NCBI GenBank assembly: GCA_965637545.1 | Contig: OZ281497.1 | Span: forward strand, 21,886,001 to 21,950,000 | Origin: Phallusia mammillata | Taxonomy: Eukaryota | Reading direction: 5' to 3' | DNA: 64,000 nucleotides | Part shown: piece after piece, positions 445 through 56,800 of the stretch | Layout of the letters: each line of letters opens with the position of its first letter | How positions within the stretch are numbered: the stretch's first letter is position 1 | Notes under the pieces: model-generated | Database searches by the model: none | Told to the model about the DNA's origin: nothing | Seen by the model: only the letters and a program-made list of their open reading frames with translations | Position numbers and translations under genes: made by a program

Positions 445-3400
445 TTGTTGGCTTTGACATCAGAAGGCGAGTACATATCTCCTGTACATAAATCCCTGTC
501 TCGCAAGGCTTTCTCTTCTCTCTCTTACTCATTTGTATGTAACCACCCTTTGCCTTGTCTGCGTCGCGTTTTTTCGTTTCTTTCATTTTATATGCGATCC
601 CCAAGCGTAGTTACGAACGGTTGCTTAAGTTGCGTTCGTTCTTTTTTTGTTTTTTTACTTTAGTTCGCACGTTCCCGTTTTCGTTTGTACATTGTCATCC
701 GCACTCTGTCGCTGTTGTCGCCGCCGACTCATACCATCGCCGGAGTCGGCCGACACGCGGCGACCGCCAAAACCTTGTTGTACAGATACTGCTAAATGCC
801 CCATTTTCGTTCTATGCTGTGAATAACGCCATCTTTGTGTATTATCGCTCGCAGAACACGCTACGGTCGTGTGTCGCTGCACACAGGCCGTGACAAACGT
901 TGAACGCACCATCATTGGTTTTTTCCTTCCCACACGGAGGGTCCGTTAGCCGTTAAGTTTCCGCTGCTCTTGTATACATTTTCTTTCGTACAGTAGTAGT
1001 TCCGCTTTTTGTGCGGACTTATAGCTAGCAAAACCCGCGTAGTAGTAAACGCGAAGCTCTAAAAGGTACGTCGTCTCGCGAAAAAAACGCGCCTATAGAC
1101 TTTTTTTTAAATAACCGCGAAAAAAAATCTTCCAAAAAAAACATTTTTTTCGCTTGCTCGCGTTTTCAGGCGACCCAGTATCATCCGGTGCTTTGCCGAG
1201 CCTAAACTTTTCTTTGCCAAACCGCTTACCACGAGTCCCACGCCCACAGGGTAACACGAACACACCCCTTTTTCCCGGGACCAAACGCCTGTATATCGTT
1301 TTCCGCTTTTTCCTCGTTCGTTCTTTTTCATTTGAAGGTGTACAATATTGCCCTTGTAACAACCCTGTACTTAACCGCGTCGAACGAAAACCCCGATTAA
1401 TTGGTGCTGGGGCCGCTTATCGACCCCAATTCTCGCCCCGCGTGTGTTTTGCAATACGGGATATTCCCGCACGCCCCCCTTTGCGCGTCTGTATTCTCTT
1501 CAGTACATCGACAAAAGCACTGTGTAAGCAAAACGGGCCGATACGAGTTCACGTGCATTTTTGTGGACTCTTAAATAATGTACCACGATTAACTTGCTGA
1601 CTAAACGCAACTCGCAGCAATTACAAAGCAAATCGCAATTAAGTTAACCAGCACTGTGTACAGCGTAATTCACACAATACATTTGGTCCTACACACCGTT
1701 AAATCCGCATGCATTACCGCTTTCCGCTCAAGAGTTCAAAGGTTGTCAGGCTTAAATCCTACGCTTAAACCGCTCCCGAATACAACGAGACCCCTGGCAA
1801 CCTAACCCCGCTTGTATTTGCTTTAACATCTTGTATGCACGCCTGAAGCGGGTACCCTCCCTTGCTCGGTTGTGTAAATTTCGGAGGTCGTGCCTGGTGA
1901 GCTCGGCTATTTTCCGAAATTCTCTATTTGGCGTATGTGGCGTTCTTCGCCGCATTCACTGTGCATCTGCCAAAAATTGGAAGCACCCGGCTGTCGATGC
2001 TTGTCCGCTCTAACGCGTGGCTTATACATAGCGTCGAGACAGTCGCCCGTTTTCCATGTAAATACCCACCGCGTCGTCTAACTTTGGAAAAAATGCGGCA
2101 TCAGATAGTGCTATTTCTTTAAAAAGCAAAACGAACAGTTTTATGTGTTTTTAAGCCCTCGACTCTGAATTAAAATAAAACCCAAGCGACTTTTTTGCTT
2201 GTTGAAATCTCTTTGATAATTTGCTTCACTTCATTTCACGTGTCTTTTAGCATCACCAGCCCGCCAGTATTTCTTTGTTGTCCCGTGGTGTAATATTTCT
2301 ATGTGGCCGATCGTCGACCAACCACGGTCGTCGGTTGAGCAAATTCAAAGTTCGTTACTGTTTTGTCCTTGTCCCAGTGCCTAAAAGGTTGCCAGTACCA
2401 CCCCACAATATTTTTTTAGTAATGCTGAATCACTGGCATTGCGACCAGCGGCCGACTAAAGCATTGCTGTGTGCATTTTTGTCTTCTGTTTGAATTTTTT
2501 CACTGCACATTAAAAGTTAAAAACAGTAGTCGATTTCTTTTGGACGGATGATTTGTGTATTCTGGATTTTGGCCGTTTTCCCTGTTTTAAATGATACCAG
2601 CCTTTTTGTTCCGTTTCCCCCCTTTGTGTTTTTGTTTTTGCAAAAAGTAAAGATGTTAAAACCACCAGGATATGAGAATAAAATCAAGGATAATACAACA
2701 TTTGTTGTTTGTGGTTTGAAAAGCAATGTATTCTTTGGAGGCTAGCTGAGCATTTCCTCAAAGGAATTAGAAAAATCACAACCCCATAAAGTACAACAAG
2801 AAAAATAATAAAATTAATAGCAAAAGTGCAACATGTCTTGCAGCTGATACGTATGTCCAAAACGCATACTTATTTATGGGAAATCCAAACTTAATCACTC
2901 ATTACCCTGATTATTTATAGGACTTACCAAAATGGAAATGCCAATCCCTTACTTTGTGGGACTAGTGGATGTGGAGAAACCCTTGACAAGCCAAACAAAC
3001 GAAAAAGCCGGGTATCTGGTCGTTAAATGTAATCAATAATCAGTAATTTCACCCGAGACAGCTAGTTACGATGGAGGCAATTAGAGCTTACAGAATAATT
3101 GTCCGACGTAGTCAACATGTTTTTCAAGTTCATGTGTGGTTCGATAAGAAAACTTTTTAGTTAAATGACTTGCATTTTACCAAAAAAAGCAAGTCACTCC
3201 CCATGCTACTGTCAATGTTAATGGATAGACTTGTGTTGTAGACCTTGACAGTAGAAATCGATTCTTTTTTTAATCACAGTCTCCATAACGCTTCTTGTGT
3301 TTGGCTGGGCTGACACAAATCAGTTGCCAAAAAGTGAGTGAAATTAACGAACAGTTTATTGTGCGTTGCGACCAAAAACGAAAACACCATTCTAAAACAA

Positions 3401-4050
3401 ACACACAAGCTCCAAGGTTGGTAACGACAAAACATTGTAAAAACTGTTTTGGTGACTGTAGTGTCGAAAATAATTCGCAAACTTAATACAGTGCTCAAAC
3501 AAAGAGGTTATTCTAACCAGCTGACGACAATCAAACCACTGGTAAAGGGTGCACTTGATTTTTTCAGCCAAAATCAATGTAGCTGCTGGCCACCGCACAA
3601 GGGCTTCGAGCTTTAATTAGCGAACATTGAGAGCCAAAGTCTGAAGCTGTAATTTAAATTATTCGAGGGCTCTCAAAAGGCTCAGGTTATATGCTTCCAC
3701 GCAATTAAATAAAGGCTGCAATTAAATGCCGCAACAATATGTTGAGCTGACAACTGTAACCAACAAGTTAACATAACATAGTGTTTTTTTAACGCTTAGA
3801 TGTTTGTAATTTGGTCCTTGTTTGCAAAATTTTAGATGTAACTTAACAAAATATGCTCCATTAGAGTACCAGCACTGCCAAAATTAAACCCAATACAGTT
3901 TTGGCCTTGTATCAGCCACATCATAGCAAAGGGTGAAGGCAATGTAATTGTCGATAATAGTTAGTCGTTTCTTAAACATTTTCTCCCGCTTCAGCACATT
4001 GACAAGGCCCAAAATAGTTATCGGAGATGCAGATTATTACAAAATCGTGC

Positions 4051-6804
4051 TTACTGCTGCAGGACATGCTTGTACTTTTCCACCACATTGCCAAAATGTC
4101 TTCCAGCCCAGTATGCTTTACCACAACCAACACAGCAGTAAAAATCATCCACCTCGTTGCACACAGGCTTCGGCACTTGTTCGACCAGCAAACTAGCCGT
4201 CTGTGCTTGATTCTCGCCCGGTAGTTTTGTAACAATAGTCCCACTCTCGTATTCCAAGTAGGAGCAGTTTGAGATCGATTCAGGACTGATGAAATAGGAT
4301 ATCACAGAATGAGGTTGTTTCTTAGGGTTTTTAGTGATGACCACTTGTTCAATTTTTTCCCCCAGGTTTTGAACCGACTGTGTTTGATTCCGGCCAAATG
4401 AAAACGAACTTTCAGGTGGGTTTACCTTTGGGGAGCTTGAACAGTCGTTATCGCTATCGCTGGAGCAAAAATTACCTTCAAAATCATCATCATCTGTGTA
4501 AGTTTCAATACAGTGGGCCAAAGAGGAGAGTGATTCTGGCTTTTTCGCAATCGATGCTTGTTTTCTTACAGCGTCCCAGGGTATATGGGAGCCGGGTAAA
4601 GTTGTCAGGGAACCGTGTTGTTTGGTTTCAATAGCACGAAGCATTTCTTTCGATGAAAGCTGGAGGTATTTGCCGCAGTTGCACAACTGACAGCGACTGA
4701 ATATGTCCTTCGACGTAACCTTAACGTTGTAGTGCTTTAAAACGAACGCTGCTTGCTCTTTCGCCTTCATTTCGTTGGGTACGTTAAGGCAGCGACCGTT
4801 CGGAACCTGCGCCGACAAAAAGACAAAAGGTGCGCCTGAAGTTAGAATAACGCGATCATGTCTTCGCGCTAGCACAGCCGCCCTATCGTGGCATTCGCTA
4901 TTTGCCAGGATTTCAGCATCAACACCACAACAACGCAACTGTCGACCCAAACCTTGCAGCATGGTATCACAGACAACACGAAATTCACGTGCCGTGATTG
5001 GTGGCATCACAGGCTTGGGTAAAGATGCTTTGATACCCATGTATTGCTCCCGTAATGCTCTACCACGACCTCTAGCGAGTGTTTGTTTTGGACGTTCGAC
5101 GACGACATTTTCAATGGTAAGACATGGATCAAGGCTTTGAAGACGTGATGTTAGTACATTACATACTTCTAATAAGCAATATGCGTCTAGTGCTGCATAT
5201 TGTATCTGAGACTGCCTCAACGGACGACGTTCCCAGTCTGATATCTGTTCACTTTTGTCCAAGGGAAGGCCAACAGTTTGCAAAACAAGTTTGCTCAAAC
5301 CAGTAAGGCTTTTGTACTCAGCTTTAGCATTGGTTGTTTTTAGCACTTCGGGATACAATCGACTGATGTGTTTTGAAACAGTGTGAAGGTCTACAATTTT
5401 CACAGAAGATTTGACAGCATTTTGTACTTCAGGCAAGCTATCAGCTAGTTTGCTCAAATCCTCTTTTAACCCAAAACCAACTTTTGTGTAGTCTTTGGAC
5501 AATAATAGCTTTGTTACAAAACTGGATAGATTTGATTTCTGGTCTGTTGGGAAGTTAAGCACATCGATAAGAAATACAGAATCTTTGACTGCTATTTGAA
5601 GTAGTGCAACTTTGGTTGCTCTTCCACAACTAAAAGACCACTCTGCATCCATACCTACATTAGCAGGACCAGCAAGTACAACCGATTGACAAAAATCCAA
5701 TGTTTGAGAATCAGACACAAAATGTACACTTGAATCTGGTAACGCTAATGAATGAAACTTCTGCTGGTTTTCATTTAAGCCAAGCATCGTTGATTCATAT
5801 TCATCTAAGTCCCAATTTTCATCTTCCAAATCAGCAGTGTCAACATTAGTAGATTGATGCAAACCATAGACCTTTTCCCAGTATGTTGCACCAGCATAGT
5901 CAAAGTATGTTTCCAAAACAAGTTTTACGAGTTCTTTTTGAACTGCTACATCTTGACCTACTGTCTTTTGCACCAGTTCTTTGGTGTTCTCAAAAGAGGC
6001 AATTTTTTCTACGTAGTATCTGTACAGAATGTATCGCAGCTTTGCAACTAAATGTCTCCTTGTTAAGTTCGGACACAACTTTGCTTCATCACCTTCTTTA
6101 TCATACAGTTTCAACCACCTAGTTAATACTTTGTCTAGAAACTGGGGCCTAAGAATTTCAATTTTGGTTGATGTTAAGTTATTGCTTGTCATGAATTCAA
6201 CAACATCGAAGTCAGGACCAAGCCAAGAATCAACCATGCCTATTAACTGATTTTGTGTCGAATCACTTTTTTGCATGTACTGGTCCAGCAAATTTACTTT
6301 GTTCTGAAGCAAAGCAGGAATAGCCATGTCGAAAAGACTGAACTCGTTTTGAATACACAATTCTGCAGTAATTGCTACAGCCCCATTGAGGTTGCCATCG
6401 TGTACAGTTTGAAGTATGCATGATTTAACCAAATCAAAGTTTGGTTTGTCTACATTGAAACACTTAATAAGTTTGCAGGCAAGCGTTTTGTGGGAAACAA
6501 AAGCAATTTCCAAAGCCTGCTGTTTGAGTTCCTCATCAACTGAACCCTTTAAAATAGGATTTCTTCGGATAAGTGCCTCTTGGTAAGACATTATATGAAG
6601 CCCAAGTGATCTCGGCTTTTTCTTGTTTTTACTGCAGGCAATCAGGTCAAGTGAAAAATGTAAAGGCGAGTTTGGGCCAATACTGAAGGAGAGAATTTGA
6701 TTAATTTTCTCTATTTCCCTTTTATTCCATAATGCATTGAGTTGAGTCTTAAGTGAGGAGTCGGGCCCGAAGCAAGAAATTGTTTGTTCATTCGTACTTG
6801 CCAT
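4051..6804 (-). CDS. EXD3: Exonuclease mut-7/Nibbler homolog (DEDDy 3'-5' exonuclease + Mut7-C), single coding exon, 917 aa
   Basis: ExoI VGMDAEW, ExoII GFGLKED and ExoIII QYAALDAYC motifs. Mut7-C segment VVCDTMLQGLGRQLRCCGVD and Zn-ribbon halves RCQLCN / CCVGCGKAYW. N-terminal LNALWNKRE matches the EXD3 N-terminal helix as recalled, which supports the ATG at 6804. Confidence 0.93.
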   Translation of the reverse strand: MASTNEQTISCFGPDSSLKTQLNALWNKREIEKINQILSFSIGPNSPLHFSLDLIACSKNKKKPRSLGLHIMSYQEALIRRNPILKGSVDEELKQQALEIAFVSHKTLACKLIKCFNVDKPNFDLVKSCILQTVHDGNLNGAVAITAELCIQNEFSLFDMAIPALLQNKVNLLDQYMQKSDSTQNQLIGMVDSWLGPDFDVVEFMTSNNLTSTKIEILRPQFLDKVLTRWLKLYDKEGDEAKLCPNLTRRHLVAKLRYILYRYYVEKIASFENTKELVQKTVGQDVAVQKELVKLVLETYFDYAGATYWEKVYGLHQSTNVDTADLEDENWDLDEYESTMLGLNENQQKFHSLALPDSSVHFVSDSQTLDFCQSVVLAGPANVGMDAEWSFSCGRATKVALLQIAVKDSVFLIDVLNFPTDQKSNLSSFVTKLLLSKDYTKVGFGLKEDLSKLADSLPEVQNAVKSSVKIVDLHTVSKHISRLYPEVLKTTNAKAEYKSLTGLSKLVLQTVGLPLDKSEQISDWERRPLRQSQIQYAALDAYCLLEVCNVLTSRLQSLDPCLTIENVVVERPKQTLARGRGRALREQYMGIKASLPKPVMPPITAREFRVVCDTMLQGLGRQLRCCGVDAEILANSECHDRAAVLARRHDRVILTSGAPFVFLSAQVPNGRCLNVPNEMKAKEQAAFVLKHYNVKVTSKDIFSRCQLCNCGKYLQLSSKEMLRAIETKQHGSLTTLPGSHIPWDAVRKQASIAKKPESLSSLAHCIETYTDDDDFEGNFCSSDSDNDCSSSPKVNPPESSFSFGRNQTQSVQNLGEKIEQVVITKNPKKQPHSVISYFISPESISNCSYLEYESGTIVTKLPGENQAQTASLLVEQVPKPVCNEVDDFYCCVGCGKAYWAGRHFGNVVEKYKHVLQQ

Positions 6805-6806
6805 TG

Positions 6807-7228
6807 TTATTTGCTGGGGCTTTCAATTGCAGAAGTTTTATTGGATCTGCTTTTCTTGAATTCCTGAATCATTTCCAACTCAGCTTGAATTATTTCTCTC
6901 TGAAAAAATTACAAAAGAATTTTGATAGATCGGCTTGGTTCCACATACACTGTATTGGTATGTGCAATATAATATTTGGTAAAATGATTGGGGGTCGACA
7001 AAAACAACGAACACTTACACGTGCTTGTCTCAGTTTAAGCTCCTCCTTTGTCGGGGCCTTCCACGCATACTTGTCAAACATCGATGGCGTATTGGAAACG
7101 TAAAATGCAGCCAAGGGAAATGATAAATAAATCACCATCTAAGAAAATTAATTCGGCGATTAACACGACTAACATAAACATTTAATCAATATTGAACTTA
7201 CACGGAAGAATTCCAATCCATACCCCAT
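6807..7228 (-). CDS. PET100: Cytochrome c oxidase assembly factor PET100, 79 aa; exons 7228-7202, 7138-7019, 6899-6807
   Basis: Spliced product MGYGLEFFR-MVIYLSFPLAAFYVSNTPSMFDKYAWKAPTKEELKLRQAR-REIIQAELEMIQEFKKSRSNKTSAIESPSK*. It matches PET100 (human MGVKLEIFRMIIYLTFPVAMFWVSN...EIEEFK). Two phase-0 GTAAGT...AG introns of 63 and 119 nt. Confidence 0.88.
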
Positions 7229-7448
7229 TTTTTTCTGATGTAATTTTCAAAAATAAAAACCAAGAAAATCACAATTCTTGACCTTGCTTCGTCAATGCAA
7301 TGAAAAATCCCCTAATGTGTTTTCGGATGAGAGAACAGATTGAAGAAATCAAAGATTTGGTTTCGTGAGATTTGGATTGGTTTGGGTGCAGTATTTCTTT
7401 TTCACTAAATGTATAGTCTATTTGGAAAAAAAAAGTTCGTATGAATGG

Positions 7449-7460
7449 CCGGAAGATGGC
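7449..7460. promoter_or_regulatory. Composite ETS/YY1-like site in the PET100/HDAC11 bidirectional promoter
   Basis: CCGGAAGATGGC = ETS core CCGGAA overlapping YY1-type AAGATGGC, between divergent ATGs at 7228 and 7708. Confidence 0.45.
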
Positions 7461-7707
7461 ACTGCAGCTTTAAAAAAAAACAATTTTACTTTTAGGTAGT
7501 CTGATTAGCAGCCAGTGCAACATAGTTGTTTAGGTCTAAAATTGTCAAGTTGTTTTGTTACTTGTAACACTACACAGTGCCAGTGTGTTTGTTTTGATAA
7601 GGTTTTTCATGAATTAAACATACCTCTCGAACACACAGATTTAAAGATTTCACTGTACAAGACATAGGGACAAAAAAGAGTGCATTGGTGTTTAAACAAG
7701 GTATCAG

Positions 7708-10700
7708 ATGGGTATTTTTGGAAAGGAGTCTCGTAATGATGCTAGATCTTCTGATACTTTAATTAAGTAAGTTGCAACGTTTTTGTGCGATTTCTCTGTG
7801 ACTGTAAATAAAAAATGTGGATGCAATTATTATAAATTCATTTGTGGCTTATGAAAAAACAAATTGATCATATATATGTGAACTTACAAATTTAATATTT
7901 TTTCCATACAACTCACCTTAAAAAACATATTTTTTTTAGAAACTCATCTTTATACACATTCAACTTGAAGACTACAAGTTGGCCCATAGTTTATGATGCA
8001 GGCTATAACATCACGTTTATGGGAGTAGAAAAACTCCACCCATTTGATTCAAGCAAATGGGGCCGGGTTCATAACTTTCTACTTGGTAAGGGTGTTTCAG
8101 TATTGTATTTTGGACATGTAGTTGTTAGTTTTATTGTTTTGTTTGGGTAATAAATGTTATTTCGAAGCATTTAAAAGACATCTTGCCCCCAAGCAAACAA
8201 ATTGTTCAAAAATGCATACATTTGTGGTTCGACATTTTGCTATCACAACACATTTAATTTGGCAGATGACAAAGTGTTGACTGAAGAGGAGACGGTTACC
8301 CCTGTTGAAGCTACTGAAGAAGATTTGCTTGTTGTTCATACACAGCCATATCTTAACAGCCTTAAGGTATTGGTACCATATGTATTTTATGTATCTGTAT
8401 TAATGAGTGTTACCAAAATATTTTTCTTTCTAAAATGCGATTTACTGTTTTAATTTAAAAGGGGCAATCAGTTAAGTTTGTTCGACAGGTATGACTTAGA
8501 TGTTGTTGAGAAATTTTCTACTCTTTTTGTTTACTTTATGTTGCATGCTGGTGATATATAAAGAGTATCAGGTCACCCTTTTTAGTGCATGTATATTCAT
8601 GTTGTTCTACATCATCATGATTATAGCTTTGCTATCCTTGCTAGATAGAACAATTGTTACAAATAAAGTCATCTTTGCTTATAAAAAGCTTAACAAAAAC
8701 TGCTGATATGTAGAGTAATGTTTTTGCTTAAGTTAGGCATATATTTGACTTGTTAAAACTAGCACTTCATCTAAAAGTTTAGTTTGTGCTCAAAACATTA
8801 GTTTTTCTCTATTGTGTCCATTTGTTTTGTCTAGTTCCATCTATGTCAAATGCATACAAAATGTTGGTTGAGTTGTGAATGTCATGATGAGAAAATTCAA
8901 ATAAAAAATAAGGGGATCTATTCTGTTACATTTCAACATTGTGTTTATATATCTTTTATGAATTCTAATACTCTCACATTTCAAATCGTCTTCTTAAGTT
9001 TAATGATGAATAGCCATATAGCTGTATATTGGCATAATTTATTATTCAATTCAGTGTAACTGATGTGGCCACTAATATCACTTATATGAGCATTTGCTAA
9101 AATGTTTGAATAATAAGCATTTACTTTTTATGTCTATCTGGGCCATGATATTCACCATTAAACTTATGAACAGATCCGTGTATAGTGTCTTAAAATACTT
9201 TTTTACTATTTCCAATTTGAAACTGTTTAATTCACTGTGCAGATTTTGTCTCAATGAGCAAAAAATAAGTAATACATGCTGTATTTGAAGAACTGGTAAT
9301 GGGTGTTCTTTACTTTTCCAAGTCAATGGATTTTTTCCCAAATCTCAATCAAGACTTTGGTTTAAAATGTATTTACATTTTGCAGTGGAGTGCAACAGTT
9401 GCACAAATAACCGAAGTGGTCCCTGTAGCTCTGCTTCCAAACTTTGTTGTGCAAAGAAAAGTTTTACGTCCACTTCGTCTACAAACTGGTGGCAGCATAA
9501 TGGCTGGAAAAATGGCTGTGGAAAGAGGTTGGGCCCTAAATATTGGTGGTGGATTTCACCATTGCTCAGCTGAGAGAGGTGGAGGGTTCTGTGCTTATGC
9601 TGATATTACACTGCTTATTAAGGTACCTTTTTGCTTTGAGATTAGTAACATTTACTGTGCAAAAAATGAAGAGTTTTGACTTGTTCATTTCTACCAACAT
9701 AAACTAATGACGCATTGTATTATGTAAAAATATTCAAGGTCTAGTAATGGTAGTTACAGCAATACAGCACTTAATGGAAAGATTTTCACAAAAGTATACC
9801 TAACAACTATGTGTTTATTCATTTCTAAAGCCCTGTCATGCACTGATGGTTAAGTGTTTCAAAAGATTCAGTTAGGGTTTGGCCCACAATTTTCTTCTGT
9901 ATAAAACATGAATAGTTGAAAAAAATTTCTTATTATTATTGTTTGCCTGGATTTTAGTTTGTTCTGCATCATTTTGAGCAAATTAAACGAGTCATGATTG
10001 TTGATCTGGACGCCCACCAGGGAAATGGATATGCCCGTGATTTTATGGACGATGATCGTGTTTATGTTATGGATGTCTTCAATCGAAATATTTACCCACA
10101 AGATGGCTTTGCAAAGGCTGGAATTAAGAGGTGTGTTAATAAAAAATAAAAGCATGTAATCCAGGTTTTGCAAGGAGTCCAAAAGTTTAAGATTGAGTAT
10201 GTAATTAAACTGTGCCACAAATGAACTTGCATAGTACATTGAAACCTAGACATCTTATGACCCAACAATGTATCTAATAGTTTCTATCATCACGCCATGT
10301 CACGCCTTGTGTTTGAACTAGAGTAACCTGTGGTTTTGAGTGCTGTGGTGTGCGTTTTTAAAGGAGGTCATTCTATTGTGGAGAGAATACAGTAAACATC
10401 TCGCAGTTGTTGGTGTGCCAAAAGACAGCATTCGACACAAATTAGCAACAGTTGAGTTATCTGACCCGACTAGTTTGCGACAAACTGAATGCACCCAACA
10501 ACATGAATTGTCTTTGCATCTGAAAAAAAGTGTGTTCTGAAAAAACGAGTGTTCTCATCCAAAAAAGAAAATTTTTAAGTCCAGCTGCGCAAATAGGTTT
10601 AGATGAACTCTAGGACCTGCCATGATTCACATAAATAAAAGCAATGGCCTAAAATTGTACATCAAACCTTTCCCTAAAAATTGCTTGTTTTTTAGAAAAG

Positions 10701-50800: not shown

Positions 50801-53800
50801 ACATTCGCAGAGTTCACATCCATTTTCATTCTTAGCCAGGCCCAATTCACACCCGAGCATTTCGGCTGTACAGGCATGCGCTTGACAAGGAATGGCCGGC
50901 TCTTCAACTACATTTCCCCCCTCTGACAAAGCACCAGGTTTGCTTTTGAAACCGCACACGGTGGAACATTCGTCCATGGTCTGTTTGGGAAGTCGTTACA
51001 CCGTTGTTAATTGGTGTTTGACTAGTTTTGCGATTTCGACACATGTGTAATGAAAGAGTTTTAGGGGAGACAATTCTTGAAGTTATGAGAATTGTTTCCA
51101 AAAACGTTTAAAGAAACCACTAAAATTAACAGTGAAAATTAAAATCTGTTTAATTTAACAGTTTTACAGTTACTGCTTTTTACTAATGTCACGTTTCAAA
51201 ATGATTTAAAAACACTTCTCTTGCTAAACGTCTGTGTTCAAAATACACTTCATTAAAATAATGTATGTAATGAGTTTATCCCGTAAATAAGTACAGATAA
51301 ATAACGCTAAGGATAAAGGTATAGAAAATCTTTGCCTCAAAGTTGTTGTTATTTCCGTTGCAACCGCCATAGATGAATTTCTTACAATGAGCGGCTGCTC
51401 TGTCGTAGTAATACCTCAAGTGATTACCTCTACACGGCCCTTGTTCAGGAACTAACATACATGCTCCCCTAAAATCAAAACACGGTAAATTATAAATGCA
51501 AAACTATATATATACCATATACATTATGATTTAGTTTATTATAAATAGCGAATGAGGCCTAAGATTTTTTTTACGATTGGCGCACTTTCTCATTAAAATG
51601 GTAATTTTTTTATTCAACTTTCGGACTTGCGATTGGTTGAAAAGAGCCAATTAATTTATATGTTACGGCTTTTGGAGATTTAAATGTGATCAAGTTTAGC
51701 GAAGGTCTTAAACAAAGAATATTCTCATGCAAATAGAAATCTTGAACTCAAACAAAACTCACTTGTCAACAGATTCGCTAGATGAACGCGGCTCCTTTTC
51801 AAGCATTGCACATTGGCAAGTGTCACATCCACGTTCGTCCTTTGCGAGTCCGAATTCACATCCAAACATCTCCGCAGTGCAAGCATGCAGCGGGCAGGCA
51901 AGCGGCTCTTCAATCACATTTCCCCCTTCTGATAAAGAGAACAGTGCACAAGATTATCAGTGTTGTCAGCGAAGTAAAATACCAATAAACATTGAAGTTA
52001 GAAAAGTTGACAAGGAGGTTATTGGCCCTACTCACCGCCTGCACATTCGCAAAGATCGCATCCGTAGGCATTTTTAGCCAATCCCCGTTCACATCCCAAC
52101 ATTTCAGCAGTACATGCATGCAATGGGCAACCGACTTCAACCCCATTTCCTTCTGACAAAGCACCAGCTTTGCTTTTGAAACCGCAAACGGTGGAACATT
52201 CGTCCATGGTCTGTTTGATAAAGTTTGTGTTTGTTAAAGTTCTGTTTCGACACTGCTGTAGGGATTAAGATTTTTGTACAAAACACTTATTAAAGTTTAA
52301 AAATACAATTACTTGGCTATGTTGGGAAAAAAGTGTGTGGAATTGGTTAACCATTGAAATAAGAGTACCCTACTATATTTAAACATTTATCCTGTGAAAG
52401 AGTACAAAAAAAATACGTTGGGCATAAAGGTACCGTGTATCTTTTTTACCAGTTATATTTACCTCGAAATTGTTGTTATTTCCGTTGCAACCTCCGTAGA
52501 AGAACTTTTTACAGTGAGCGGCTGCTCTGTCGTAGTAGTACCTCTCGTGACTACCTTTGCACGGCCCTTGTTCAGGAACTAACATACATGCTCCCCTGTA
52601 AATAAAAACCACGACAAGTTTTACATTCGAAATCAATTATCAGGTGTGAGTTTTGTTAATTATCATAACAATGTATCGAATCCAACAGCTTTGTATGATC
52701 GCCAAAGACTCTGTTTCAAATATAGTTGGGACTTTTAGACGCGCGATTATCAGCAAAAAAATAATATAATTTAGTCCCGAGCCCAAAATGTTTCTTTTGG
52801 GTTTAAATATGACCAGGTTTGACCATGGCCTTACTAACCCAAGAGTGAACATCCTTATTCAAATAGAAAAGTGTAAATTCAAACAACACCTACTTGTCGA
52901 CAGTTTCGCTGGAGGCTCGCGGTTCCTTCTCAAGGATTGCACATTGGCAAGTGTCGCATCCGCGTTCGTCCTTTGCAAGTCCGAACTCACATCCAAACAT
53001 CTCCGCGGTGCAGGCATGCAGCGGACAGGCAAGCGGCTCTTCAATCACATTTCCTCCCTCTGACAAACGCAAAGTTTACCAGTGTTTTCAGGCAAGTAAA
53101 TACCCAACAATCAGTAATTAAAACGTTTAATAACTTGTCATGGAAACTTTTTCTTAACACTCACCGCCAGCACACTCGCAAAGATCGCATCCGTTTGCGT
53201 TTTTAGCCAGTCCTCGTTCACATTGCAACATTTCAGCAGTACACGCGTGCAGTGGACAAGCGACAAGAGGCTCTTCAACCAAATTCTCCTTGCTTTTTAA
53301 ACCGCAGACGGTGGAACATTCGTCCATGGTCTGTTTGATAAATCGTAACAAAGGTGTTAGTTCGTGTTTATACGCTTTGCTGTTTCGACACAGTTGTAAT
53401 GATGACGAGTTATATAACACTTGTCGAAGTTTAAGAAACAATTGCTTGGATATGCTGTGACGAAAGTGTATGCTAATTGGTTAATTATTGAAATAAGAAT
53501 ACTATTTAAAAGTTTGTGCTGTTAAAGAGCAAAGAAAGATTAAGATGGGGATATAGATAAAGAGGATATTTTCACAAACAATTGAATTCACCTCAAAATT
53601 GTTGTTATTTCCGTTGCAACCTCCGTAGAAGAATTTTTTACAGTGAGCGGCTGCTCTGTCGTAGTAATACCTCTCGTGACTACCTTTGCACGGCCCTTGT
53701 TCAGGAACTAACATACATGCTCCCCTGTGAATCAAAAACAGGGAAAATTTTACATTCAAAATCAATTATCAGTTGTGAGCTATTAGGTTATGATAAAAAT

Positions 53801-56800
53801 ACATGTAACCAGGTTTGGTTAAAGTATTATAATAGCAGAAGAATATCCTTATTCAAATAGAAAATTGTGAACCCAAACAAAACTTACTTATCGACAGTTT
53901 CGCTCGAAGAACGCGGTTCTTTCTCAAGGAGTGCACATTGGCAAGTGTCGCATCCACGTTCGTCCTTTGCCAATCCAAATTCACATCCAGCCATTTCAGC
54001 GGTACAAGAATGTAGCGGACAAGGAACTAATGGTTGTTCGACTACATTTCCCTCCTCTGACAAAAGCACAATATACGTGATGGTTACCAATATTGTACAC
54101 TGTTACCAGATAAGTAATTTATCAACAAACAAACATCATTTTGTAGCAACCCGGTTTGTGGATCCCAATGTTTAAAATTGGATTGGTTTTTGAAATGTCT
54201 TAACATCGAAATCGTAATAATTTTTGGCTAATCTAACTGGTGGCTAGATATATTGGCTTGAACAAGAGCAACATAAAGGATTGTTATAACTGTAATTGTA
54301 AAGTCATTTCGAAAACCGATTTTTATAACTGTAATTGTAAATAAGATACTTGAATCCAGTGGAGTCGGGTTGCAAATTTTTTAACCGACTTTACAACCTT
54401 GAGAAAAAACGCTTTTTTAGAAATATAACTCCGGTTATTGAGCACGATTGTTTCAAAACGGTTCTAGTCTCCATTACTGCAAAATTGTTATTGCCCGAAG
54501 TCAGATTTGTCAAACCATTTAAGGTTTTCATCAGAGTAAACATTCGCTAAACATGAAAAAGCGATGAATACTGCGTTCGGATTTCTAAAAACGTTTTTTT
54601 GGAAGGCGCACAAAAGCACAACACCCACCACTTTCGGGTTCGGGCCGGGTTCGGGCTCGACTTCCAGGCCCGTTTACAACTCTGAGCACAACACCTATCA
54701 ACACTAACCTTCACATTCACACAGTGTGCATCCGTAATAGTTGGTCTTCAGTCCAGTACCAGCGGCACAGTTAAGAATTTCCGGAGTGCACCCGTGAAGC
54801 AAACAAGGAGCCGGTTTTGGTTCCTCGACAGCAGCTTTGCTTTTCAAACCGCAAGCGACGGAACATTCTTCCATAGTCTGTTTGCGAAATCGTAACACTG
54901 GAGTTAGTAGATGTTTGCTAAGGTTCGATTTATCGCATAATGACAACGCTTTATAGGTAGCTAACATGAAAAATTACTATTCGGGTTTATTGGGGCAAAG
55001 CCTATGATCAACTTGTTGTGAAATTTGTGAAAAAGTTTGTTTAACTCAAACTTATGAACAAAGAACAAAGCGTTTTTTTACAATTTGAATATTGGTAAAT
55101 TTAATATTTGGGCAGAAAACCGCGCATGTTATAATTACCGTATATACTCGCTAATAGGTCGCGCCACCGTATAGGTCGCGCCACCGTATAGGTCGCACTG
55201 TTAGTTTTGTGTTAAAAAAGTTTAATTTAGAGTTGACTCGCACATAAGTCGCACTGAAAATCTAGGGATTTAAAAGGCCCTTTCCCTAGCTTTTTTGGTT
55301 GCAATTGTTTGTTTTTTAGCATTGAACTGCATTGCATTGAAACCGCAAAACCATTTTTTCTCAACAAAGTGGGAAAATCCAATGCACGCTGAGCGGTCGC
55401 ATGTGCGTGTGCGCTCATGAAACTGTCTCGCATTGGTATGTGCGTGCACGAGCGCATGCACCCGTATTTGCACTTATGTCGAGCGGATAGGTCGCACCTA
55501 TAATTTTTTTTTTTAAATATAAGCAAAAAAGTTGCGACCTATCCGCGAGTATATACGGTATAGATACAGACGAAAACTTTTTTCATCAGCAGTTAACCTC
55601 AAAGTTGTTTGCATTTCCGTCGCATCCGCCGTAGAGAAACTTTTCACAATGCGCGGCAGCTCGGTTGTAGTAATACCTGATGTGCTGGGCTTTGCATCGT
55701 CCCTGCTCGGGTAGCAACATACAAGCTCCCCTAACGATAAAACACCGTTCTTAATTTCAAAACTTGTGTAAACCTGTTTTAGATATGAGCAAGATTTGTT
55801 TTAGATTTGTCTCTGGTTTACACCTTTGATTTAAACCAAGTTATCAGTTTGTTTTTCAAGGTAAAAAGCATCGAATGGAAAACGCCCGTTATAACTTAAT
55901 GAATACAATATTAAAGAAAAAATAAAGTTGTATTATAGCTTCTCCAGACCGAAACCATTTTCCAAGTTCAGGAACAAAACGTTTTCATACTCAAATTAAA
56001 TTGGTTTGGAAACGAAAAAAAAACTTATTCGAACAGAATCGGAAAAACGTCACTTACTTGTCGATAGATCCGCTGGAGGCACGTGGTTCCTTTTCAAGGC
56101 CTGCTTAAACGTGATAAAATTAGTGTTTCAACAAATGGAGCAAACTTTCATTTAAAACTCAATCTTTGACTCATACCCTTTAGTTACCTTTATGCGGCGT
56201 CTTTCCGAAAGCCGAGTCGATTTCTGGAAAACAATGATATTTTAGGTTTAATTGAAGTAGGTTGATCGTAAGCATAACCTAACGCAGTGATTCTCAAACG
56301 CGGCTCCCAAATATTCATTTTGCTGCTAACACCACCCCTCAGAAAACCACCAAAGATTGCTATTTTTTGTAAAAGCATAGAGCCAATAAATGATAAGCTG
56401 CAGACAGTGCACACTGAGTTGCTTGGCCATTGTGAGCCAGTTTCATCTGTGCTGTATGTCCAGTTGTGGTATCGCACAGACTAGGTGATGCATGGGGTTG
56501 TGCCCTGTGCTCCCAACAAACTGGAGTGCCGTTGAATGGCTACACTAGCCAATGCGGCCGATCTCTCGTCACCAGCTGCACTGATGAGACCTTATAGGTC
56601 GAAACAGTGTGCACTGTCTGCAGATTGCTATTTTAGCTTTCAAAGTAATAATCTTTAATGATTTTCTCAAGGTTTCGTTTTTTTTGCGGCTCCCTACACA
56701 CTTGGCCCCGATAATAAAAAAGTTTGACGTAACGTACGTGTTAAAAATTATAACAAGACTAAATAGCATTGACATATACCTGCGCATTCACAAACTGGAC

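What the first reader, a model, noticed from the sequence alone, without database searches (positions are those of the whole stretch)
6721..7228. PET100 stop is 2 nt from the EXD3 start (TAA-CA-ATG): a candidate dicistronic or overlapping unit
Seen: spliced PET100 ends at TAA 6809-6807, then CA, then the EXD3 ATG at 6804 in strong context (AACAATGG). EXD3 homology begins ~17 codons later and the next Met is ~70 codons in, so this ATG is needed. There is no room for a 3'UTR, promoter or AG acceptor between the ORFs, and they are out of frame, so readthrough cannot fuse them. PET100 has a strong-context start and several more AUGs, which disfavours leaky scanning. Known: reinitiation after ~80-codon ORFs is usually poor unless special signals exist (viral termination-reinitiation). 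Inferred alternatives: (a) coupled termination-reinitiation on one mRNA; (b) an EXD3 mRNA started or trans-spliced inside PET100, e.g. at ATTCAG|G 6865-6864, which would give an AUG-free leader; (c) PET100 polyadenylated from AATAAA at 6842-6837 (inside its own CDS) or 6726-6721 (inside the EXD3 CDS). The layout would link a COX assembly factor to a small-RNA trimming nuclease.
Basis: partly seen in the sequence, partly recalled or inferred. Interest (0 to 1): 0.85.

Follow-up and report, generated by a model that had tools for sequence, protein, structure and literature searches.

The report
Tunicate PET100-EXD3 operon, two-base spacer
A small mitochondrial assembly-factor gene (PET100) and a small-RNA-trimming nuclease gene (EXD3/Mut-7) form one transcription unit that several sea squirts share, and here they sit only 2 bases apart, so the usual sea-squirt way of cutting an operon RNA apart would remove the first gene's stop codon.

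Summary
PET100 has 3 exons and 79 aa (Pfam Pet100). It ends at TAA 6809-6807, followed by CA and then the ATG (6804) of an intronless 917-aa EXD3/Mut-7 ORF. In 4 of 4 RNA runs one assembled contig runs from about 7341 to about 3339-3404. In those contigs intron 2 is removed exactly as predicted in all four, and intron 1 in the three that reach exon 1.

The closest EXD3 relatives are ascidians (Clavelina, Ciona), and Ciona-like spliced-leader 16-mers lie in the window. The same PET100-to-intronless-EXD3 tandem occurs in Clavelina (26-nt spacer) and in three unnamed lineages of the same EXD3 clade (25, 64 and 66 nt). So this is a conserved tunicate operon, a known kind of unit (Ciona operons without intercistronic DNA).

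What is unusual here is that the 2-nt spacer holds no AG. Any trans-splice acceptor therefore lies inside the PET100 coding sequence; the nearest is CCCCAG at 6815/6814.

Most likely EXD3 mRNA arises by spliced-leader trans-splicing inside PET100's last exon, and PET100 is read from RNAs that escape it. This is inferred. Only contigs were available, not raw reads, so the spliced leader and poly(A) ends could not be seen. Termination-reinitiation is not excluded (about 0.15).

The same scan noted another candidate operon in this genome (SIRT4-LARP6), which I did not check.

The parts
3339..7341 (-). Transcribed unit holding both ORFs (about 3.8 kb after splicing)
   Evidence: One contig per run in 4 RNA runs spans 7341/7339/7253/7139 down to 3404/3363/3339/3385. 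Contigs do not prove a single molecule.
7202..7228 (-). PET100 coding exon 1 (MGYGLEFFR); the 5'UTR reaches up to about 7341
   Evidence: start context AAAAAAATGG.
7139..7201 (-). PET100 intron 1 (63 nt, GTAAGT...TTCTTAG)
   Evidence: Joint 7138/7202 in contigs of 3 runs.
7019..7138 (-). PET100 exon 2 (transmembrane helix region)
   Evidence: tblastn matches to the same exon in L001, L002-L006, L009 and L024.
6900..7018 (-). PET100 intron 2 (119 nt, GTAAGT...TTTTTTCAG)
   Evidence: Joint 6899/7019 in contigs of all 4 runs.
6807..6899 (-). PET100 exon 3 coding part, including the stop TAA at 6809-6807
6805..6806 (-). Spacer CA between the PET100 stop and the EXD3 ATG; it contains no AG
4051..6804 (-). 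EXD3/Mut-7 homologue ORF, 917 aa, no intron. The 3'-5' exonuclease domain is at residues 362-555 and Mut7-C at 609-728.
   Evidence: Acidic and tyrosine residues D386, E388, D449, Y536 and D540 are invariant in the alignment.
6814..6815 (-). Nearest AG upstream of the EXD3 ATG (CCCCAG|C, would give a 9-nt leader). It is the best candidate trans-splice acceptor and lies inside PET100 codons 77-78.
   Evidence: It is analogous to CACCAG|G in the Clavelina spacer. Its use is inferred, not shown.
6837..6842 (-). AATAAA inside the PET100 coding sequence (codons Asn-Lys). It ends 27 nt before the stop codon begins, which is 32 nt before the EXD3 ATG.
   Evidence: Function not shown; cleavage at the usual distance would fall before or at the stop.
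6721..6726 (-). AATAAA inside the EXD3 coding sequence. It could end a PET100-only mRNA with a 3'UTR of about 100 nt.
   Evidence: Function not shown.
3355..3360 (-). AATAAA at the end of the unit. The longest contig ends 16 nt downstream, at 3339.
7342..7643 (.). About 300 nt between the 5' end of the PET100 contigs and the 5' end of a divergent plus-strand histone-deacetylase-like gene; a probable shared promoter region
   Evidence: Contig ends at 7341 and 7644 and a GT..AG joint at 7766/7940 on the plus strand. The plus-strand gene is homologous to the Hist_deacetyl gene next to PET100 in Clavelina. The promoter role is inferred.

Best explanation
This is a two-gene operon, PET100 then EXD3, of the tunicate (Ciona) type. 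It is inherited from an ancestor shared with other ascidian-like lineages.

One promoter upstream of about 7341 drives a precursor that runs to the poly(A) site near 3339. EXD3 mRNA is most likely made by adding the spliced leader at an AG just upstream of its ATG. In this species every such AG lies inside PET100's last exon. The best candidate is 6815/6814, 9 nt before the ATG; others are 6821/20, 6848/47, 6865/64 and the intron-2 acceptor 6901/6900.

Trans-splicing there removes the PET100 stop codon from the upstream part. Each precursor can therefore yield either a usable EXD3 mRNA or a usable PET100 mRNA, not both. PET100 would be translated from RNAs that escape trans-splicing. These are either the full 3.8-kb RNA, in which intronless EXD3 acts as a long 3'UTR, or a shorter RNA cleaved just after the stop or after the AATAAA at 6726-6721.

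Shown: the gene models, the splicing, RNA contigs that join both ORFs, conservation of the pair, and the tunicate affinity. Inferred: the trans-splicing itself, the acceptor used, and the 3' end of the PET100 mRNA.
For: - **Gene identities.** Pfam assigns Pet100 to the first product and DNA_pol_A_exo1 plus Mut7-C to the second.
- **RNA.** In 4 of 4 RNA runs one contig covers PET100 and all of EXD3. Intron 2 is removed in all four, and intron 1 in the three contigs that reach exon 1. The contigs end near an AATAAA at 3360-3355.
- **Taxon.** The best EXD3 hits are ascidians, Clavelina lepadiformis at 44% and Ciona at 41%. In the tree the window sits in a well-supported 8-row clade with them.
- **Spliced leader.** Three near-copies of the Ciona 16-nt spliced leader lie in the window, against 0.10 expected by chance. 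The leader sequence was checked in PMC1488885.
- **Conservation.** The same order, with an intronless EXD3, occurs in Clavelina (spacer 26 nt), L002-L006 (25 nt), L009 (64 nt) and L024 (66 nt). Each of those spacers holds an AG 3-36 nt before the ATG. L009 has a textbook pyrimidine tract plus TAG.
- **Published Ciona biology.** Most operons have no intercistronic DNA, downstream genes carry the spliced leader, and poly(A) is added to the G of the acceptor AG. Mutually exclusive maturation has been proposed, and unresolved dicistronic cDNAs exist (PMC1488885). Ciona has 1,310 operons rich in single-exon genes (PMC2760879).
- **Leaky scanning is unlikely.** Six AUGs precede the EXD3 AUG in the spliced RNA, and the PET100 start context is strong.
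Against: - No read or contig showing a spliced leader joined to EXD3 was seen. Only assembled contigs were available, and they clip short tips such as a 16-nt leader.
- The candidate acceptors inside the PET100 coding sequence are weak, with only 27-53% pyrimidines in the 15 nt before them.
- The contigs pass straight through the junction in all four runs. This fits an abundant stable dicistronic RNA as well as it fits rare precursors.
- An exact-match look-up in the indexed public assemblies found no contig that encodes this EXD3, so it gave no independent contig ends.
- Whether Ciona itself keeps this gene pair could not be checked.
Confidence: 0.62

Rival explanations
1. The unit is a true dicistronic mRNA. 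Ribosomes translate PET100 (79 codons), terminate at TAA and reinitiate 2 nt downstream at the EXD3 AUG (termination-reinitiation).
For: The stop and start are 2 nt apart, and the EXD3 AUG has a good context (A at -3, G at +4). Contigs span both ORFs in 4 of 4 runs. The spacer has no AG, and the acceptors inside the coding sequence are weak. EXD3 has no intron, so no exon junction lies downstream of the PET100 stop; the long RNA need not be a target of junction-dependent decay (inference).
Against: In four related lineages the spacer is 25-66 nt and the frame offset varies (2, 1, 1, 0), so close stop-start coupling is not a conserved property of this pair. The PET100 RNA has no UGGGA motif, and the junction folds no better than shuffles (z -0.09). 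Reinitiation after ORFs of this length is normally poor without special signals (established knowledge; also discussed in PMC11291117). The host lineage has a ready alternative in spliced-leader trans-splicing.
Confidence: 0.15
2. The genes overlap and EXD3 has its own start. An EXD3-only transcript begins inside the PET100 gene (intron 2 or exon 3), with or without later trans-splicing at the intron-2 acceptor. PET100 mRNA ends separately.
For: Intron 2 is AT-rich and 119 nt long. A transcript that starts in it would carry an unpaired strong acceptor at 6901/6900. The resulting 95-nt leader would hold one AUG, opening a 21-codon ORF that ends 2 nt before the EXD3 AUG, and such short upstream ORFs allow reinitiation. 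AATAAA at 6726-6721 could end a PET100-only mRNA.
Against: No contig begins in this region in any of the four runs, and no loose ends were reported there. Conservation of the tight tandem across lineages fits co-transcription better.
Confidence: 0.1
3. The joint contig is only an assembly of rare unprocessed precursor with two efficiently separated mRNAs. PET100 mRNA would be cleaved at or just after the TAA, with poly(A) following or even completing the stop, and EXD3 mRNA would come from other precursors.
For: AATAAA at 6842-6837 lies 27-32 nt before the TAA and the CA at 6806-6805. The reads tool itself warns that a contig across two genes shows no single transcript. In Ciona unresolved dicistronic cDNAs are rare (PMC1488885).
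Against: This differs from the main explanation only in which PET100 3' end is used. Nothing seen here shows a poly(A) end near 6805. The distance from the hexamer is at the long end of the usual range. At the unit's own 3' end the longest contig ends 16 nt after AATAAA, and that distance here would cut before the stop.
Confidence: 0.1

Closest known systems
Ciona intestinalis operons without intercistronic DNA, resolved by the single 16-nt spliced leader (Satou et al. 2006, PMC1488885; Satou et al. 2008, PMC2760879)
   Same: Both have same-strand genes less than 100 nt apart, unrelated functions, a single-exon member and a dicistronic RNA that can be detected. The host is a tunicate with a Ciona-like leader. 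Mutually exclusive maturation has already been proposed for this class.
   Different: In the described Ciona cases the two mRNAs abut. Poly(A) is added to the G of the acceptor AG, and the upstream stop codon lies before it. Here no AG exists between the stop and the start, so the boundary must lie inside the upstream coding sequence, and processing there would leave PET100 without a stop. Leader addition was not observed here.
Caenorhabditis elegans SL1-type operons (cited as refs 42-43 in PMC1488885)
   Same: Both have no intercistronic space. An AAUAAA lies shortly upstream of the downstream gene's acceptor. Upstream 3'-end formation and downstream trans-splicing compete.
   Different: The phylum and the leader differ. 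The nematode cases keep the upstream stop codon ahead of the shared site.
Termination-reinitiation on viral and some cellular mRNAs (calicivirus/influenza B type; review cited in PMC11291117 as Sherlock et al. 2023)
   Same: The stop and start are within a few nucleotides, the ORFs are out of frame, and the upstream ORF is too long for ordinary reinitiation.
   Different: No UGGGA-type 18S-complementary motif and no special structure were found. Close spacing is not conserved in relatives.
Bicistronic nuclear genes of green algae, one of which encodes a PET100 orthologue in Auxenochlorella (PMC11291117)
   Same: A small mitochondrial assembly factor is the short first ORF of a two-ORF locus. 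Some algal loci have touching stop and start codons.
   Different: The algal loci work by leaky scanning and are depleted of upstream AUGs. Here six AUGs and a strong first start context argue against leaky scanning. The origins are independent.

Membership tests
Tunicate (Ciona-type) SL-resolved operon | Two or more same-strand genes separated by less than 100 nt | tested here: met
   2 nt between the PET100 stop and the EXD3 ATG.
Tunicate (Ciona-type) SL-resolved operon | Transcription across the boundary (dicistronic RNA detectable) | tested here: met
   Contigs from 4 RNA runs cross 6809-6804 without a break. Caveat: these are assembled contigs, not single molecules.
Tunicate (Ciona-type) SL-resolved operon | Host uses spliced-leader trans-splicing | tested here: inconclusive
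   EXD3 groups with ascidian proteins. Three near-copies of the Ciona leader lie in the window against 0.10 expected. No SL RNA gene and no SL-bearing transcript was seen directly.
Tunicate (Ciona-type) SL-resolved operon | Downstream gene's mRNA carries the spliced leader | not testable with these tools
   All runs are kept as contigs only, and 16-nt tips are clipped by the assembler.
Tunicate (Ciona-type) SL-resolved operon | Cistrons abut: the upstream poly(A) is added at the G of the acceptor AG, downstream of the upstream stop codon | tested here: not met
   There is no AG between TAA and ATG. The nearest AG (6815/6814) is 5 nt before the stop, so an abutting layout that keeps an intact PET100 ORF is impossible. 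The relatives L001, L002, L009 and L024 could meet it.
PET100 (cytochrome c oxidase assembly factor) | Match to Pfam PF09803 above the curated cut-off, in a short single-pass membrane protein | tested here: met
   45.6 bits against a cut-off of 24, over residues 2-70.
EXD3 / Mut-7 / Nibbler-type 3'-5' exonuclease | DNA_pol_A_exo1 domain with conserved acidic and tyrosine residues, plus a Mut7-C domain | tested here: met
   PF01612 E 5.5e-22 and PF01927 E 2.9e-20. D386, E388, D449, Y536 and D540 are invariant among 6 tunicate sequences. Activity was not tested.
Viral-type termination-reinitiation (TURBS) | Stop and restart codons overlapping or within a few nucleotides | tested here: met
   TAA-CA-ATG.
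Viral-type termination-reinitiation (TURBS) | Upstream 18S-complementary motif (UGGGA) and supporting structure within about 100 nt | tested here: not met
   No TGGGA anywhere in the spliced PET100 RNA. The junction fold has z -0.09. The motif definition is from memory.

The most novel reading that the evidence does not exclude
EXD3 is translated from the stable 3.8-kb dicistronic mRNA by termination-reinitiation 2 nt after a 79-codon ORF. This would be a cellular chordate example of coupled translation, and it would make nuclease output depend on PET100 translation.
Probability: 0.14. Interest if true: 0.8.

Novelty: new variant of a known kind. Interest (0 to 1): 0.45.

Why it matters
Ciona-type operons raise a question left open since 2006: how can two mRNAs come from a precursor with no space between the genes, and are the two products mutually exclusive? 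This locus is a natural extreme of that problem. The processing site cannot lie outside the upstream coding sequence, so every trans-splicing event must destroy a PET100 message.

Three measurements here would test the mutual-exclusion model directly: the ratio of SL-EXD3 RNA to through-RNA, the 3' ends of PET100 mRNA, and ribosome occupancy. Relatives with 25-66-nt spacers would serve as built-in controls.

The locus is also a warning for annotation. Gene finders will tend to fuse or drop one of these genes. And the pairing of a cytochrome oxidase assembly factor with a small-RNA nuclease need not mean they share a function.

Tried and rejected
- **Exact-protein look-ups that found nothing.** The window's EXD3, Ciona P0003 and P0008 are not on record. 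P0010 was listed without DNA. The PET100 of L024 returned only the same contig.
- **Repeat homologue search.** Searching again with the alignment gave the same five proteins.
- **Papers not held.** Matsumoto 2010 (PMC2860165) and Ganot 2004 (PMC507004) could not be read. Acceptor consensus data and the Oikopleura operon boundaries therefore could not be checked.
- **Bacterial-type promoter and terminator scan.** It is uninformative for this eukaryotic locus.
- **Pfam on a fragment of the neighbouring gene.** It gave no hit. Homology to the Clavelina deacetylase gene was shown by tblastx instead.
- **Lost-stop idea, not adopted.** I considered that the 2-nt spacing arose when an ancestral stop was lost (Clavelina AAT-TAA-A against window AAT-AAA-A), so that the old spacer became coding. 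PET100 tails vary in length among the relatives and the window's tail is not unusually long, so one resemblance at about 45% protein identity is too weak.
- **Alternative 3' splice site, no evidence.** Joining PET100 exon 2 to position 6813 would be in frame and would make a PET100-EXD3 fusion. No such joint appears in any run.
- **Readthrough or frameshift fusion, rejected.** The frames differ, and an in-frame TGA lies 7 codons before the EXD3 ATG.
Full report
**The observation**

On the minus strand an ATG at 7228 opens a three-exon gene: 7228-7202, 7138-7019 and 6899-6807. Both introns (63 and 119 nt) begin GTAAGT and end in a pyrimidine run plus AG. The spliced ORF is 240 nt and encodes 79 aa. 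It matches Pfam Pet100 (45.6 bits, cut-off 24).

The stop TAA is at 6809-6807. CA follows, and then the ATG at 6804 of an uninterrupted 917-codon ORF that ends at 4051. That ORF carries a 3'-5' exonuclease domain and a Mut7-C domain, the EXD3/Mut-7 architecture.

The ATG at 6804 is the real start by homology:
- Five full-length relatives begin within a few residues of it.
- The next Met is residue 72.
- An in-frame TGA lies seven codons upstream.

**RNA evidence**

All public runs for this organism are kept only as assembled contigs. In four RNA runs from four studies, one contig per run covers the locus. The 5' ends are at 7341, 7339, 7253 and 7139, and the 3' ends at 3404, 3363, 3339 and 3385.

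Intron 2 is removed exactly as predicted in all four contigs (joint 6899/7019). Intron 1 is removed in the three that reach exon 1 (joint 7138/7202). All four pass through the stop-start junction without a break or a loose end. The longest contig ends 16 nt after an AATAAA at 3360-3355, which fits the poly(A) site of the unit.

So PET100 is expressed and spliced as predicted, and RNA covers the boundary. A contig is built from 31-letter words and clips short tips. It therefore proves neither a single molecule nor the absence of a 16-nt leader or a poly(A) branch. The tool says as much.

**Whose genome this is**

Among 5.8 billion proteins, the only strong full-length EXD3 hits are ascidian: Clavelina lepadiformis (44%) and Ciona intestinalis (41%). 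The others are unnamed proteins from metagenomes. In a tree with ten more distant homologues, the window's protein sits in a well-supported clade (100/98) with these. It is sister to the L002 lineage.

The Ciona spliced leader, confirmed in PMC1488885, has three near-copies in the window. They differ from it by 1, 1 and 2 mismatches, against 0.10 expected by chance. They are not SL RNA genes, because no GT donor follows them. They look like fossil 5' ends of trans-spliced RNAs. Unchecked notes from the same scan report similar leader-bearing retrocopies elsewhere in this genome. I take the host to be a tunicate that uses a Ciona-like leader.

**Conservation of the gene pair**

| Lineage | PET100 upstream of EXD3 | Spacer, stop to ATG | Notes |
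|---|---|---|---|
| Window | yes | 2 nt | no AG in the spacer |
| Clavelina (L001) | yes, three-exon PET100 | 26 nt | intronless 927-aa EXD3 |
| L002-L006 (five samples) | yes | 25 nt | |
| L009 | yes | 64 nt | pyrimidine tract plus TAG in the spacer |
| L024 | yes | 66 nt | close to L009 |
| L023 (sister L007) | not found | n/a | 6 kb upstream searched in L023; L007 is too short to tell |

In a more distant animal genome (GCA_001949145.1) EXD3 is a 17-kb multi-exon gene, so the intronless form is derived.

In Clavelina a histone-deacetylase gene lies divergently upstream of PET100, as it does in the window. The spacer length (2 to 66 nt) and the frame offset between the ORFs (2, 2, 1, 1, 0) are not conserved. 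In every relative the spacer holds at least one AG 3-36 nt before the EXD3 ATG. Only the window has none.

**What is known about such units**

In Ciona about a fifth of the genes lie in 1,310 operons, and these are rich in single-exon genes (PMC2760879). The genes abut with no intercistronic DNA. The downstream mRNA begins with the spliced leader at an AG. Poly(A) of the upstream mRNA is added to the G of that same AG.

The authors argued that one precursor may give either the upstream or the downstream mRNA, but not both. They also found rare unresolved dicistronic cDNAs (PMC1488885). The window's locus has the layout, the host and the RNA continuity of this class.

**What is different here, and the most likely mechanism**

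The two-base spacer has no AG, so an acceptor for EXD3 can only lie inside PET100's last exon. The nearest is CCCCAG|C at 6815/6814, which would give a 9-nt leader free of AUGs. Further candidates give leaders of 15 to 95 nt.

Processing at any of them, Ciona-style, would leave the upstream piece without the TAA. I therefore think that:
- EXD3 mRNA comes from the fraction of precursors that are trans-spliced inside PET100;
- PET100 protein comes from RNAs that escape this.

The escaping RNA could be the full 3.8-kb form. Its downstream part has no intron, so no exon junction lies after the PET100 stop. It could instead be a shorter RNA that ends just after the stop or after the AATAAA at 6726-6721.

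Confidence differs by level. That this is a conserved operon is well supported. That EXD3 depends on trans-splicing is an inference from the lineage's biology, which I put at about 0.6-0.7. The particular acceptor is a guess.

**Rivals**

- **Termination-reinitiation** fits the 2-nt spacing, the good context of the EXD3 AUG and the weak internal acceptors. Against it, the relatives lack close spacing. There is no UGGGA motif and no unusual structure (z -0.09).
- **Leaky scanning** is very unlikely. Six AUGs precede the EXD3 AUG, and the first has a strong context.
- **An internal start site** in intron 2 or exon 3 is possible. No contig end supports it.
- **A PET100-EXD3 fusion** through an alternative acceptor would be in frame but was not seen.

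**Verdict**

The finding is real and is explained, in kind, by a known system: the tunicate operon. It is a boundary case within that system, because the gene boundary has moved into the upstream coding sequence. This makes it a useful natural test of how operons without spacers are resolved. It does not by itself indicate a new mechanism, nor a functional tie between cytochrome oxidase assembly and small-RNA trimming.

As an independent parallel, a PET100 orthologue is also the short ORF of a bicistronic locus in a green alga. There leaky scanning is the mechanism (PMC11291117).

Noticed in passing
window 52854-52869, 53848-53863, 56024-56039 (minus strand): Three near-copies of the Ciona 16-nt spliced leader (1, 1 and 2 mismatches; 0.10 expected by chance). 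None is followed by a GT donor. Each lies about 20-25 nt downstream of a repeated ...GAAACTGTCGA(C/T)AAGTA... segment, in the region another note calls hammerhead copies. They look like leader-bearing 5' ends of retro-copied RNAs.
   Followed up: partly
L009:65-125 and L024:61-121: In two related lineages the conserved PET100 N-terminus (MGGTVLEFFR) and the rest of the protein are in different frames. An identical 20-nt piece (ATTAAAATGATGTCCTGCAG) separates them, at the position of intron 1. It is retained in a Logan contig that starts with an adapter remnant. It could be a very short non-canonical intron, or PET100 there may start at the second ATG pair.
   Followed up: partly
window 7644-8408 (plus strand): A divergent neighbour gene, spliced at 7766/7940, is homologous to the histone-deacetylase-family gene that also lies divergently upstream of PET100 in Clavelina. 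The three-gene neighbourhood is therefore conserved. Here the two 5' ends are only about 300 nt apart.
   Followed up: partly
L023:1-6000 and L007:1-330: In one sub-lineage of the same EXD3 clade no PET100 exon is found upstream of the intronless EXD3, so the operon has been broken or re-partnered there. In L007 an acceptor-like TTTTTCAG lies 57 nt before the ATG, with AATAAATAAA in between.
   Followed up: partly
window 3711 and 4359: All four RNA runs read G where the window has A at 3711 (EXD3 3'UTR). One run reads T for C at 4359. These are most simply strain differences, not editing.
   Followed up: no
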